A stretch of 63,922 bases of DNA, counting the filler, from Olpidium bornovanus S191 (lineage: Eukaryota > Fungi > Olpidiomycota), in assembly GCA_017911155.1 (NCBI GenBank). It is 27 parts of 27 records of this genome, joined end to end, with 100 filler letters (N's around TTAATTAATTAA, not from the genome) between each part and the next. Parts side by side here need not be neighbours in the genome. Positions count along the whole stretch, not along the records: positions 6,965 to 13,795 come from JAEFCI010004902.1; positions 13,896 to 15,784 come from JAEFCI010006047.1; 25 more parts are not named here. The stretch is one strand, 5' to 3'. Below, one piece after another: positions 6,965 to 13,977 of this stretch. The position numbers were made by a program, and so were the translations under genes. Each line of letters opens with the position of its first letter. Within the stretch, counting starts at the first letter, position 1. The notes under the pieces are model-generated. The model made no database searches, was not told the origin of the DNA, and worked only from the letters and a program-made list of their open reading frames with translations.

Positions 6965-11327
<4,363 letters not shown>

Positions 11328-11740
11328 GCCACACGGTTTTTTCGTTTTCTTTCGCCGGGAGCCGGCCCCCGTCTCCCCCGTCCGGCGTGCCGGCCCGCGA
11401 CGCGGGGCGCGGAGCCGAAAGGCGGGGGCGGGTCGGGTTCTCCGCGCGCGTGCCTTTGAAAAAGAAGAAAAAAAAAACCTTCGTGCTTGCTCTCCGCGCG
11501 GGGGCAGAAACAAAAAAAAAAAGAAATATATCCAGATTTTAGTTAGTACCAATTCACACGAACTCAAGCAAAATAAAAAATTAGTACTGGCAGTGAGGAT
11601 TGAACCGATGACTAGAGCGTAACGTGCAGATTACTAGCCGTTTAGCTACGCGGTTTGGAACTGAAGTAGTAACACCACAGCAGGTTTATATAGTGCTAGC
11701 AGCTCTCAATGTTTCGGACAAGCTTGGTGCCGCTCCTGAG

Positions 11741-11880
11741 GTGCTCAGCGCGCTCTTGACGCTCCTGTCGCCGGTCTTGATGTTCCTGATGTGCTTAATG
11801 ACGCTCTCAACATTCCGGACGTGCTCAATGCCGCTCTCGATGCTCTTGACGTGCTCAGTGTCGCTCACGACACTCCTGAC
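11741..11880. repeat. Degenerate 30-bp tandem repeat (about 4.5 copies) within ORF 11686-11961(-); encodes a 10-aa repeat V(K/R)S(V/I)ES(G/V)IEH
   Basis: gtgcttaatgacgctctcaacattccggac / gtgctcaatgccgctctcgatgctcttgac / gtgctcagtgtcgctcacgacactcctgac. Confidence 0.7.
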
Positions 11881-12376
11881 GGTCGGTGCCTCGATGTGAT
11901 GCGCCGCGCTCAATGCCCCGTCGTCATTTCGGCGCGGGTATCGGGTAATCCGGAAGGGCACGAGAAACCCCCCGTCGGGGATTATTTCCCCCGGTGTTCG
12001 GGCCCTTCCCCCCTCCGAGCCGTCAACACCTTCCCCCCTTCTGAGCCGTCAACACCCGTCCCCCCGAGCGTCAACACCCTCCGCGGGACGCGCGGAGCCC
12101 ACGCGCAGGGCCAACCAGGGTCGCCGCGCAGAGACCAGCGAGGGCCGCGCGTCCGCGCGGAGCCCACGCAAAGTACCTCGCAGGTGGAAGGCAGACGGCG
12201 GCGCGCCAGCGCGCCGCCTCTGTATAAATAGCGCCCTTCTCCCCGCCTGTGTATCACTTTACACAACACTACTTTTCCTTACCTGGGAAATACCATTTCC
12301 CCGACTCGTAACTTGAAACTCCTTGACCAAGGACCTGACCGTGGGTATTGGGCCTGACTTGTACATCCACAGTACA

Positions 12377-12693
12377 CTCGAGCACAGTCAGCTGCCAGTG
12401 CGGCTTAAAGCCGCGCTTTTCCCCAATATCACGCACAAGGTGCCAGAAAGGACGTCTTGGGATGAGTAAGTCCGTGGTTCTTCAATACCGCCGTATCTCC
12501 CGAAGTGCGCGAACGCCCGGGCAGTACCGATACACGTGTTTTGGTGCATCTTCATCCGCAGATGCTTCGCGAGTCACTGGAGCGATCCAGTTATGCTGCT
12601 GCTTCTGCTTCTTGCGCGGTCGACTAGCTGCAGCAGCAGACGCGTTGCTAGCCTGCCCATTTTGTTGTTCTGACTGGCGGCGGGTGACAACCA
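12377..12693 (-). pseudogene. Histone H3 variant / CenH3-like pseudogene fragment
   Basis: MVVTRRQ...[55 protein letters not shown] aligns to H3 [49 protein letters not shown]. In-frame TGA at 12482-12484; similarity is lost after VLEC. Confidence 0.85.
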
Positions 12694-12723
12694 TTTTGCA
12701 ACGTGGGTGTGTGTATATTACGG

Positions 12724-13671
12724 AAAAACTACTACGCAAAACTACCGCGCAAACGTTGTGAAGGAGGGTGAGTGTTAGTTTTGAGTGAAAGAGATAAAAA
12801 AGGAAGGGAGAACCTATCCCCACCATTTATCAGCAATGAAATCCGAAGGCATGATGGCGTAGGCTTTCACCATGCATTGGGCATAGTGTACTTGTCGGCA
12901 TGGGCCTTGAGACTTTTTTGGTGTTACCTCTCGGAACCCAAGGTCGTTCCGAGAACATGCAACCCTCCATGGGACATTCATAGTTGCCGAGGCAGGATTT
13001 GTTGTGGGTCAGTCCGTTCTTTGATTTGTTGGAGCCGTACACAATTGTAGCCCAGCCAACGCTTCGAACATCCCGAGCTGTGTATCCATCAGGAATGTCA
13101 AAGCAGTAGTAGATGGTTCCTTGTGGGTATTCAGGCGTTGATTCCAATGCCGTTGATTCCAATGCCGTGCCGATTCCAGTTTGACAGGATGTTGTTGGGG
13201 TGGTGATAGGAAGAGCTGTATTTTCGTCATCTGCCGACAATTGACTTGAAACATCGGTAGTCAGATCTGCATCTGTAGTGTCTGCCGAATAAAAGAACAT
13301 TGATGATGACGGACTCTGTAGCGGAGGAGCGGGTCATCAACAAATGATTAGCATAGCAATGATCCCATCGATCACGCGTCTTGTAAGACTTGTAGACTAG
13401 GCTTTGTATTGGGGTCAGCGTTCAAGACGATCGTAACTATGGTGTAAACGTTGAAGTAAAGAGCGAGAGAAGCGAAAAGCGGTGACTTGCTTTTATCGAT
13501 GAGAACGAGTGCGCGGATTGGATAGTCATGGATGGCCCATCCGCGAGCGTCAAGAAAAAACTATAAATTAATCTATGTACAAGGCGCGCGTCACACGGTT
13601 TTGAGGGAGGGAGAGAGATAGAGAAGAAGCTGCTTTCAAGATCTGCGTAGTAGTTTTGCGTAGTAGTTTTT
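12724..13671. repeat. Perfect 22-bp inverted repeat pair (12724-12745 and 13650-13671), built from a 13-bp unit AAAACTACTACGC
   Basis: aaaaactactacgcaaaactac at 12724 and its exact reverse complement gtagttttgcgtagtagttttt at 13650. Confidence 0.85.
12830..13300 (-). CDS. GCM (glial cells missing)-like zinc DNA-binding domain ORF, probably truncated and transposon-associated
   Basis: PEYPQGTIYY...VGWATIVYGSNKSKNGLTHNKSCLGNYECPMEGCMFSERPW...LCPMHGESLRHH follows the GCM pattern EWPD..Y...SWAM..N......KKSCLGVVVC...C....RP......CPNC.GPL. Confidence 0.65.
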   Translation of the reverse strand: MFFYSADTTDADLTTDVSSQLSADDENTALPITTPTTSCQTGIGTALESTALESTPEYPQGTIYYCFDIPDGYTARDVRSVGWATIVYGSNKSKNGLTHNKSCLGNYECPMEGCMFSERPWVPRGNTKKVSRPMPTSTLCPMHGESLRHHAFGFHC

Positions 13672-13977
13672 TACCTTGGTTAGTTGTACAGCGACCAGAC
13701 CACCCAGAGCGACCCTGGCTCAACCAGTCTAGTCAATACCGTCCACCGATGATCGATTGGAAGCCAACCATGTTGTAGCAGCATTACAAGTTGAANNNNN
13801 NNNNNNNNNNNNNNNNNNNNNNNNNNNNNNNNNNNNNNNTTAATTAATTAANNNNNNNNNNNNNNNNNNNNNNNNNNNNNNNNNNNNNNNNNNNNAAGTG
13901 CCGAGTGATCTTTTTCCTTTTGGGGGACCAACTTTTTTTTGCGTCAAAAGGGGGCGGTGGGGGGCACTTTTCAGGGG

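What the first reader, a model, noticed from the sequence alone, without database searches (positions are those of the whole stretch)
12300..13795. Candidate histone-carrying transposon: GCM-like zinc domain ORF in tandem with an H3/CenH3-like gene
Upstream of PMR1 the contig changes to a lower-GC segment lacking the long homopolymers seen in host introns. It holds two co-oriented minus-strand ORFs, a GCM-like domain (13300-12830) and an H3-like gene (12693-12377), plus a perfect 22-bp inverted repeat. WRKY-GCM1 zinc domains are an established transposase-associated superfamily, and the H3-like gene shows CpG-type decay typical of methylated repeats. Inference: a DNA transposon family that carries its own histone H3 variant, possibly to alter its chromatin or to target centromeres. 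No transposase catalytic domain is visible, and the contig ends at 13795.
Basis: partly seen in the sequence, partly recalled or inferred. Interest (0 to 1): 0.8.

Follow-up and report, generated by a model that had tools for sequence, protein, structure and literature searches.

The report
Dead transposon remnant beside histone pseudogene
Upstream of a calcium-pump gene lies a patch of genomic debris: a truncated Mutator-type transposon that keeps only part of its GCM-like DNA-binding domain, and next to it a broken fragment of a centromeric-histone-like gene split by a retrotransposon LTR. It is not a working transposon that carries its own histone.

Summary
Two co-oriented minus-strand ORFs, a perfect 22-bp inverted repeat and a lower-GC segment are all present.

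- **GCM-like ORF (12830-13300).** It is the 5' remnant of a Mutator-like (MULE/IS256-type) transposase. 73 representative homologues exist. Many carry a conserved 380-residue DDE domain that the window lacks. Their N-terminal domain folds like the animal GCM domain (1ODH).
- **H3-like ORF.** It matches H3/CenH3 only from the alpha-N helix to the start of alpha-2. It has an in-frame TGA (12482-12484). A 482-bp solo LTR (11895-12376, TG..CA ends, 5-bp duplication CTCGA) cuts it.
- **Other copies.** A ~94% identical copy in RNA contigs lacks the LTR and is also broken. A ~94% copy of the GCM ORF is also dead.
- **Linkage.** The 35-nt inverted arms enclose only the GCM remnant, and the H3-like start lies 30 nt outside them. 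Seven loci of GCM-MULE relatives hold no H3-like sequence. The second H3-like copy appears to have a different upstream neighbour.

Verdict: this is a nest of decayed repeats. A duplicated, possibly transposon-captured, histone fragment is plausible, and fungal hAT elements offer a precedent. A functional histone-carrying transposon is not supported. Interest is low to moderate.

The parts
13637..13671 (.). Right inverted arm: two perfect 13-nt units (AAAACTACTACGC on the minus strand). It is the outer boundary of the GCM remnant.
12830..13300 (-). 156-codon ORF. It is the N-terminal part of a MULE-type transposase and holds most of a GCM-type zinc DNA-binding domain. About 35 residues are missing, including one conserved Cys and the last His. 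The whole DDE domain is also missing.
13136..13165 (.). 15-nt tandem duplication inside the ORF (ALEST x2). One unit is absent from the ~94% copy in run X4.
12724..12758 (.). Left inverted arm (13-nt units, 86% complementary to the right arm). It lies 72 nt downstream of the GCM ORF stop and 30 nt upstream of the H3-like ATG.
12377..12694 (-). H3/CenH3-like pseudogene fragment: divergent N-terminal tail, alpha-N, alpha-1, loop 1 and the start of alpha-2. It shows CpG-to-TpG decay relative to a second copy.
12482..12484 (-). In-frame TGA at the position of Gln in the H3 motif RRYQ(K/R)ST. No difference is listed here for the second copy, so the stop is inferred to be shared.
11895..12376 (+). 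Solo LTR, 482 bp, TGTGA...GTACA ends, 63% GC. It has internal 26-nt and 31-nt direct repeats and TATAAATA at 12224-12231. CTCGA flanks it on both sides (11890-11894 and 12377-12381). It is absent from the second H3-like copy. Another copy lies elsewhere.
11686..11889 (-). In-frame continuation of the H3-like ORF once the LTR is removed. It contains 4 degenerate 30-nt tandem repeats (11751-11861). It has no detectable histone similarity. It is itself present in further diverged copies.
13672..13795 (.). Flank between the right arm and the contig end. 13682-13792 recurs in another context in run X4.
6965..11330 (-). Context: P-type Ca-ATPase (PMR1-like) gene, cut off by the piece's edge. Ten GT..AG introns are confirmed by spliced RNA contigs.

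Best explanation
The 2.1 kb between PMR1's promoter and the contig end is a nest of dead repeats. It is not one functional element.

(a) 12724-13671 is a ~950-bp non-autonomous remnant of a Mutator-like DNA transposon. It has two 35-nt inverted arms made of 13-nt units, a 5' leader, and the first ~150 codons of the transposase gene. Those codons encode an incomplete GCM-type zinc DNA-binding domain. The DDE catalytic domain is deleted. The remnant cannot move by itself. At most it could be moved in trans, or make a defective DNA-binding peptide. It is transcribed.

(b) Thirty nucleotides outside the left arm starts a fragment of an H3/CenH3-family gene. It covers only the N-terminal tail to the start of helix alpha-2. 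It has a premature TGA, has lost CpGs, and was later split by an LTR retrotransposon. That retrotransposon recombined down to a solo LTR with a 5-bp target duplication.

The H3-like unit exists in at least one more, equally broken, copy. It therefore spread as dead DNA, most likely by transduplication (capture by a mobile element) or by segmental duplication.

Shown: the anatomy, the homologies, the LTR with its empty site, and the existence and defects of second copies.
Inferred: that the arms are transposon termini, that the second copies are paralogues rather than alleles, and how the histone fragment was duplicated.
For: GCM ORF:
- 73 homologues were found, many 400-1300 aa long.
- At least 25 share a ~380-aa domain after the GCM-like domain. 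It has invariant D, D, C..H and E residues.
- A model of that domain (pLDDT 76, pTM 0.70) best matches the IS256-family transposase ISCth4 in the PDB (E 3.5e-6).
- In AlphaFold DB/Swiss-Prot it matches FAR1/FRS proteins, ZSWIM proteins, IS256/IS1081 transposases and K. lactis alpha3.
- The N-terminal domain matches Pfam GCM (14 of 29 sequences) and structure 1ODH.
- The window ORF lacks ~35 residues of that domain and everything after it.
- A relative's contig has perfect 30-nt inverted ends.
- A ~94% copy in run X4 overlaps a ~99% copy in the same run. It carries TGA at codon 79 and changes at invariant Gly and Pro.

H3-like:
- The two pieces give collinear H3 and Cnp1 matches on either side of the stop.
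- No C-terminal half of the histone fold is found.

LTR:
- An X1 contig joins 11889 to 12377, and 5 letters fit both sides of the joint.
- The TG..CA ends and the CTCGA duplication were verified in the sequence.
- Another LTR copy lies in a different flank (X1 record 3).
- An X4 contig spans the LTR/H3 junction with no mismatch.

Second H3-like copy:
- It is ~94% identical, with an extra base at 12522 that gives TAA or a frameshift.
- It keeps the canonical Arg where the window has His from CpG decay.

Composition: GC3 is 0.67 in PMR1, 0.56 in the H3-like part and 0.45 in the GCM ORF.
Against: - No target-site duplication flanks the arms (ATATTACGG against TACCTTGGT; read directly). They may not be true termini.
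- The same 21-mer occurs right after the stop codon of an unrelated polyadenylated mRNA in a metatranscriptome. The arms could therefore be a shared regulatory or 3'-end motif.
- Both ORF families differ from their second copies by a similar ~6%. That would also fit co-amplification as one unit.
- X1 contigs join the right arm (13644) to the continuation of the H3-like unit (11875). This hints that these pieces occur together in other arrangements.
- Contig word depths are not copy numbers, and no DNA run of the organism was laid.
- No listed contig bridges 12719-12846.
Confidence: 0.6

Rival explanations
1. The H3-like unit and the GCM-type transposase belong to one composite Mutator-like transposon that carries a histone H3/CenH3 variant as cargo. 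The window holds a decayed, internally deleted copy, and intact master copies lie elsewhere.
For: - The two ORFs are adjacent and co-oriented.
- Both are multi-copy at ~94% identity.
- 13-nt arm units lie upstream of both ORFs.
- An X1 contig joins arm sequence (13644) directly to the continuation of the H3-like unit (11875).
- MULEs are known to capture host genes, and hAT elements are known to carry H3 copies in fungi (PMC6710886).
Against: - The H3-like ATG lies outside the only inverted-repeat pair.
- The H3-like part covers only half a histone fold. Its TGA appears shared by both copies.
- In the second copy, different sequence precedes the H3-like leader from 12732 outward (joint 11567|12732).
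- The X4 GCM copy continues with other sequence beyond 12847.
- No H3-like sequence occurs in seven loci of relatives.
- No intact homologue of the H3-like ORF turned up in the protein collection.
Confidence: 0.13
2. The H3-like sequence is the organism's own single-locus H3-variant or CenH3 gene. It degenerated in place after transposon insertions. The ~94% contig would then be a divergent allele or strain variant rather than a second copy.
For: - The N-terminal tail is unique and CenH3-like, with Trp in the HWQ motif as in Cnp1/Cse4.
- GC3 is nearer to host genes than the GCM ORF's is.
- The window's exact H3-like copy is not seen in run X1, so one copy per genome is not excluded.
Against: - PMR1 exons in run X1 are ~99.7% identical to the window, while the H3-like contig is only ~94%.
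- Two different X1 contigs cover 11824-11854, which implies more than one further copy of the continuation part.
- Both versions are broken.
Confidence: 0.15
3. The inverted arms are not transposon ends. They are copies of a short lineage-specific regulatory or 3'-end motif (TAG..TAGT..TTT-like) that happens to sit on both sides of the GCM ORF.
For: - The identical 22-mer lies directly after the stop codon of a calreticulin-like polyadenylated mRNA in a metatranscriptome contig. No other similarity to the window exists there.
- The left arm lies, in the same sense orientation, 72 nt after the GCM ORF stop.
- No target-site duplication flanks the arms.
Against: - There is a single hit in 241 million records. 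By my own rough estimate of the collection's size, about 0.1 chance hits would be expected for a 21-mer.
- The motif occurs nowhere else in the 6.8-kb piece.
- An inverted pair bracketing a truncated transposase gene is the classic layout of a deletion derivative. A relative has inverted ends.
Confidence: 0.12
4. Assembly chimera: unrelated repeats were joined at a contig end.
For: - The contig ends 124 nt beyond the right arm, and the region is repeat-rich.
- No listed independent contig bridges 12719-12846 (the table is truncated).
Against: - An X4 contig spans 12242-12415 with no mismatch.
- An X1 contig covers 13048-13553 with 2 mismatches.
- An X4 contig covers 13271-13423.
- X1 has non-zero depth in every bin from 11600 to 13795.
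Confidence: 0.04

Closest known systems
hAT DNA transposons that captured and amplified histone H3 in Dothideomycete fungi (Pseudocercospora fijiensis, Pyrenophora tritici-repentis; PMC6710886, PMC3538342)
   Same: A histone H3-family sequence is duplicated as part of repetitive DNA next to DNA-transposon sequence. The copies are inactivated by C-to-T type mutation.
   Different: In those fungi the H3-like copies lie inside complete ~9.5-kb elements with 20-bp terminal repeats and 8-bp duplications, in hundreds of copies. The transposase is hAT and the decay is RIP (CpA to TpA). Here the transposase is MULE-type, and the H3-like piece lies outside the inverted arms. It is CenH3-like and only half a fold. 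The decay is at CpG. Carriage by the transposon is not shown.
Defective Mutator-like elements that retain only the WRKY-GCM1 DNA-binding ORF (for example Mutyl variants in Yarrowia; Babu et al. 2006, PMC1702500)
   Same: A MULE derivative keeps the N-terminal zinc DNA-binding module and lacks the DDE catalytic domain. It is bracketed by inverted repeats.
   Different: In the window even the DNA-binding domain is incomplete, with conserved Cys and His ligands missing. No target-site duplication is visible. The domain is of the GCM type, not the insert-containing or HxC WRKY types described for MULEs.
Pack-MULEs (Mutator-like elements carrying captured host gene fragments)
   Same: The transposase superfamily is Mutator-like. 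A fragment of a host-type gene lies immediately beside it and exists in more than one copy.
   Different: The defining layout is a gene fragment between the two terminal repeats. That layout is not met: the fragment lies outside the only repeat pair.
Solo LTRs of LTR retrotransposons
   Same: TG..CA ends, a 5-bp target duplication, an internal TATA box, an empty site in another copy, and further copies elsewhere.
   Different: None noted. The parent retrotransposon was not identified.

Membership tests
Mutator-like (MULE) DNA transposon | DDE transposase with an RNase H-like fold of the MULE/IS256 type | tested here: not met
   It is absent from the window, where the ORF stops after ~150 codons. 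It is present in relatives: invariant D, D, C..H and E, and fold matches to ISCth4, FAR1/FRS and IS256.
Mutator-like (MULE) DNA transposon | N-terminal WRKY-GCM1 superfamily DNA-binding domain | tested here: met
   Residues ~50-150 align with the family domain. The family hits Pfam GCM and 1ODH. The window copy is incomplete.
Mutator-like (MULE) DNA transposon | Terminal inverted repeats | tested here: inconclusive
   35-nt arms, 86% complementary with a perfect 22-mer, bracket the remnant. That they are true termini is not shown. A relative's contig has perfect 30-nt inverted ends of unrelated sequence.
Mutator-like (MULE) DNA transposon | 9-11 bp target-site duplication | tested here: not met
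   The flanks ATATTACGG and TACCTTGGT do not match (sequence).
Mutator-like (MULE) DNA transposon | More than one copy in the genome | tested here: met
   Run X4 holds both a ~99% contig (13271-13423) and a ~94% contig (12847-13324), and they overlap.
GCM domain (Pfam PF03615) | Sequence match to the family profile | tested here: inconclusive
   The window ORF has no hit. 14 of 29 sequences in the domain alignment hit at E<=0.1, best 1.8e-6. P0029 scores 23.2 bits against a cut-off of 25.
GCM domain (Pfam PF03615) | GCM fold with a full set of zinc ligands | tested here: not met
   The relative's model matches 1ODH (TM 0.59). The window ORF lacks the conserved Cys at alignment column 134 and the last His.
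Histone H3 / CenH3 | Complete histone fold (alpha1-L1-alpha2-L2-alpha3) | tested here: not met
   Homology ends at the start of alpha-2 (~12377). The LTR-less continuation has no H3 similarity, and no remnant is found in any frame.
Histone H3 / CenH3 | Uninterrupted reading frame | tested here: not met
   There is an in-frame TGA at 12482-12484 and a solo-LTR insertion after codon 106.
Histone H3 / CenH3 | alpha-N/alpha-1 signature (PG..[16 protein letters not shown]..LVREI) | tested here: met
   15 of 34 residues are identical to H3t residues 25-58, and 18 of 38 to Cnp1 residues 37-80. The two matches are collinear across the stop.
Histone H3 / CenH3 | CenH3-specific traits (divergent tail, Trp in the (R/H)WQ motif, longer loop 1) | tested here: inconclusive
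   The best match of the second piece is Cnp1/Cse4, and the Trp is present. Loop 1 is shorter than in Cnp1. No phylogeny was possible.
Solo LTR | TG..CA ends, 4-6 bp target duplication, empty site, other copies | tested here: met
   The ends are TGTGA..GTACA, with CTCGA on both sides. X1 record 4 joins 11889 to 12377. X1 record 3 is another copy in a different flank.
Pack-MULE / transduplicated gene fragment | Host gene fragment located between the element's terminal repeats | tested here: not met
   The H3-like ATG (12694) lies 30 nt outside the left arm (12724). There is no third arm copy in the piece.
Pack-MULE / transduplicated gene fragment | Identifiable parent gene in the same genome | not testable with these tools
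   The rest of the genome is not available. Protein searches with the pieces were blank.

The most novel reading that the evidence does not exclude
A Mutator-like transposon family with a GCM-type DNA-binding domain has captured a CenH3-like gene and spreads it through the genome of a soil eukaryote. The window would be one decayed copy. Intact copies elsewhere might still encode a transposon-borne centromeric-histone-like protein.
Probability: 0.1. Interest if true: 0.6.

Novelty: new member of a known kind. Interest (0 to 1): 0.25.

Why it matters
As it stands, this is ordinary repeat debris at a contig end: a dead MULE remnant, a solo LTR and a histone pseudogene fragment. Two modest points may be useful.

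1. A duplicated CenH3-like fragment next to a DNA-transposon remnant would extend the known fungal cases of transposon-mediated histone H3 amplification (hAT elements in Dothideomycetes). It would add another transposon superfamily and another lineage, if linkage were shown.
2. The relatives found here join a GCM-type domain to a MULE transposase in non-animal eukaryotes. The GCM family was described in 2006 as exclusive to animals. This bears on where the animal GCM transcription factors came from.

Tried and rejected
- **Word-index protein searches.** Searches with the GCM ORF, the H3-like ORF and the LTR-less continuation were all blank.
- **ESM Atlas.** Searches gave no usable lead for the GCM ORF or the H3-like piece. 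They gave only a weak Mucoromycota hint for the PMR1 exon, so the organism stays unidentified.
- **Pfam and PDB sequence searches.** The window GCM ORF gave no significant match in Pfam and none in the PDB. The transposase C-terminal domain gave none either. Structure prediction was needed.
- **Exact look-ups.** The window ORF and P0001 gave nothing.
- **tRNA idea.** The T-arm-like stretch near 11590-11625 is not supported by ARAGORN or Rfam.
- **Histone C-terminal half.** The continuation 11686-11889 was considered as a diverged C-terminal half of the histone. This was rejected: no H3 match, only spurious hits to designed repeat proteins.
- **A third arm or a shared repeat.** A third arm copy was sought, and a repeat shared between 13672-13795 and 11450-11690. 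None was found.
- **TGA as a sense codon.** This was rejected because the PMR1 exons read open in the standard code.
- **Copy number from depth.** This was not attempted. The runs that hold the region are RNA contigs, and the tool warns that their depth is not copy number.
Full report
**What is in the sequence.**
The piece runs from 6965 to 13795. A P-type Ca-ATPase (PMR1-like) gene lies on the minus strand up to about 11330. Ten GT..AG introns in it are confirmed by spliced RNA contigs that are about 99.7% identical. Above it, GC falls from 0.59 to about 0.47-0.52. The perfect 22-bp inverted repeat is 12724-12745 / 13650-13671. It is the core of 35-nt arms that are 86% complementary. The arms are built from a 13-nt unit, AAAACTACTACGC. 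This unit matches six times at up to 3 mismatches, against 1.1 expected by chance.

**The GCM-like ORF is the stump of a Mutator-type transposase.**
- The ORF has no Pfam or PDB sequence hit of its own.
- An exhaustive profile-free search found 73 cluster representatives. The best has E 4.5e-35 and 60% identity.
- Named members come from an oomycete (Peronosclerospora sorghi) and a Mortierellomycete (Dissophora ornata). The rest come from metagenomes and public run assemblies.
- Most are 400-1300 aa. At least 25 share a ~380-residue domain directly after the GCM-like domain. It has invariant Asp, Asp, Cys..His and Glu.
- Pfam and PDB sequence searches do not recognise this domain. An AlphaFold model (pLDDT 76, pTM 0.70) does find matches:
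  - the IS256-family ISCth4 transposase in the PDB (E 3.5e-6);
  - FAR1/FRS proteins, ZSWIM proteins, IS256/IS1081 transposases and the K. lactis alpha3 protein in AlphaFold DB/Swiss-Prot.

  All of these are Mutator-superfamily transposases or their domesticated descendants.
- One relative's 3,935-nt contig ends in perfect 30-nt inverted repeats.
- The N-terminal domain is of the GCM type. 14 of the 29 aligned sequences hit Pfam GCM, best E 1.8e-6. A confident model (pLDDT 90) has the GCM-DNA complex 1ODH as its only significant PDB match (E 1.8e-4, TM 0.59), with WRKY domains lower down.
- The window's ORF aligns from STPEYPQG to LRH. It then lacks about 35 residues, including a conserved Cys. 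It ends HAFGFHC*, where the family has H-x-G-x-H-x-H and goes on into the DDE domain.

The catalytic domain exists in relatives but has been deleted here.

**The H3-like ORF is a broken half-histone split by a solo LTR.**
- The frame reads ...[54 protein letters not shown].
- The part before the stop matches H3 up to REIRRY (E 0.19).
- The part after it starts one codon later in S. pombe Cnp1 and in Cse4 (E 0.087).
- The two hits are each weak. But they are collinear, both point to the H3 family, and one codon separates them. I therefore accept the homology, with a CenH3-like flavour (the Trp in HWQ).
- The homology ends at 12377, at the start of helix alpha-2.
- RNA contigs explain the break. 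X1 record 4 joins 11889 directly to 12377, and five letters fit both sides.
- The sequence shows CTCGA at 11890-11894 and again at 12377-12381. These flank a 482-bp insert that starts TGTGA and ends GTACA. The insert has a TATAAATA box and internal repeats.
- That is a solo LTR with a 5-bp target duplication. Another copy of it sits in a different flank (X1 record 3). A contig from a 2012 run spans the LTR/H3 junction without a mismatch.
- With the LTR removed the frame stays open for 67 more codons (APTVRSVVSDTEHVK...). These include four degenerate 30-nt repeats. This part has no similarity to histones, and no frame holds an alpha2-alpha3 remnant.
- A working histone is therefore excluded on three counts: the stop codon, the missing half of the fold, and the LTR.

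**Other copies are also dead, and the window copy has lost CpGs.**
- The X1 contig is about 94% identical over 12377-12718, while PMR1 exons in the same run are about 99.7% identical. I read it as a paralogue (an inference).
- It carries an extra base at 12522 that gives TAA or a frameshift in the RYC codons.
- No difference is listed at the TGA. The table hides only changes near piece ends, so the stop is probably shared and older than the duplication (inference).
- Of the 12 transitions between the two copies, 7 are CpG in the other copy and TpG/CpA in the window. None run the other way. One of them turns the canonical Arg of the FQRLVRE motif into His.
- For the GCM ORF, run X4 holds both a ~99% contig and an overlapping ~94% contig. 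It is therefore truly multi-copy. The diverged copy has TGA at codon 79 and changes at invariant Gly and Pro.
- The window's own GCM remnant is transcribed (X1 record 5, 13048-13553, 2 mismatches).

**Is it one transposon?**
Evidence against:
- The arms enclose only the GCM remnant, and the H3-like ATG lies 30 nt outside them.
- There is no third arm in the piece.
- In the second H3-like copy, homology with the window seems to stop at 12732 and other sequence follows (joint 11567|12732).
- The diverged GCM copy continues beyond 12847 with sequence unlike the window.
- Seven loci of relatives, about 44 kb in all, hold no H3-like sequence.
- GC3 differs: 0.45 for the GCM ORF, like its relatives' loci, against 0.56 for the H3-like part and 0.67 for PMR1.

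Evidence for:
- The two ORFs are adjacent and co-oriented, and their second copies are equally diverged.
- One X1 contig joins the right arm to the continuation of the H3-like unit (11875|13644).

I put the composite-transposon reading at about 0.13.

**Open points.**
- The arms have no target-site duplication.
- The arm 21-mer was found once in JGI metagenome contigs. It lies right after the stop codon of a polyadenylated calreticulin-like mRNA that shares nothing else with the window. This may be chance, or the motif may have a role of its own.
- No listed contig bridges 12719-12846.
- The organism is not identified. Related PMR1 sequence occurs in soil metagenomes.

**Comparison with what is known.**
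- MULE transposases with WRKY-GCM1 domains, and defective derivatives that keep only that domain, were described in 2006 (PMC1702500).
- DNA transposons that captured and amplified histone H3 are known in Dothideomycete fungi. There the H3-like copies lie inside complete hAT elements with terminal repeats and 8-bp duplications (PMC6710886).
- The present locus resembles both. It meets the defining layout of neither a Pack-MULE nor a histone-carrying element.

**Verdict.**
The locus is a new but ordinary example of decayed mobile DNA next to a duplicated histone pseudogene fragment.

Noticed in passing
proteins P0001-P0073; alignments A2, A3: A family in non-animal eukaryotes (oomycete, Mortierellomycete, soil and other metagenomes) joins a GCM-type domain (top PDB match 1ODH) to a MULE/IS256-type DDE domain that Pfam does not recognise. 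Babu et al. 2006 described the GCM1 family as exclusive to animals. These transposases could be relatives of the source of the animal GCM factors.
   Followed up: partly
L005:1242-1263: The 22-nt arm core occurs immediately after the stop codon of a 396-aa calreticulin-like ORF in a polyadenylated metatranscriptome contig. Nothing else in that contig resembles the window.
   Followed up: partly
L004:1-3935: A Logan contig encodes the 641-aa relative P0003 and two further ORFs (291 and 198 aa). It ends in perfect 30-nt inverted repeats, so it is probably a complete element of this family.
   Followed up: partly
window 11460-11567: This A-rich stretch in the PMR1 5' leader is shared by many RNA contigs that diverge on either side (loose ends at 11460, 11509, 11526, 11529; joints from 11567 to 12732 and to 13449). 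It may be a small dispersed repeat, or these may be low-complexity mis-joins.
   Followed up: no
window 11583-11660: A stretch with a tRNA T-arm-like GGTTCAATCC (minus strand). ARAGORN and Rfam find no tRNA or other RNA family there.
   Followed up: yes
window 12089-12145: This internal piece of the LTR (CGCGCGGAGCCCACGC... repeat) has a word depth of 3481 in run X4. Neighbouring single-copy pieces there have a depth of ~2-3. The sequence is very abundant in that sample.
   Followed up: no
window 8070, 8580, 8670: Most contigs covering each of these three PMR1 positions, among runs X1, X28 and the soil metagenome X25, read C, C and G where the window has T, T and A. These may be strain differences or assembly errors in the window.
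   Followed up: no
window 11015-11330: The PMR1 N-terminal coding region is ~80% GC. It encodes Pro/Ala/Arg-rich low-complexity sequence, and several unrelated highly expressed contigs mis-join there.
   Followed up: no
window 11679-11686 and 12224-12231: There are two TATA-like boxes. TATATAAA lies on the minus strand just below the end of the H3-like continuation, and is a likely PMR1 promoter. TATAAATA lies on the plus strand in the LTR and points antisense into the H3-like fragment. An X4 contig starts at 12242.
   Followed up: no
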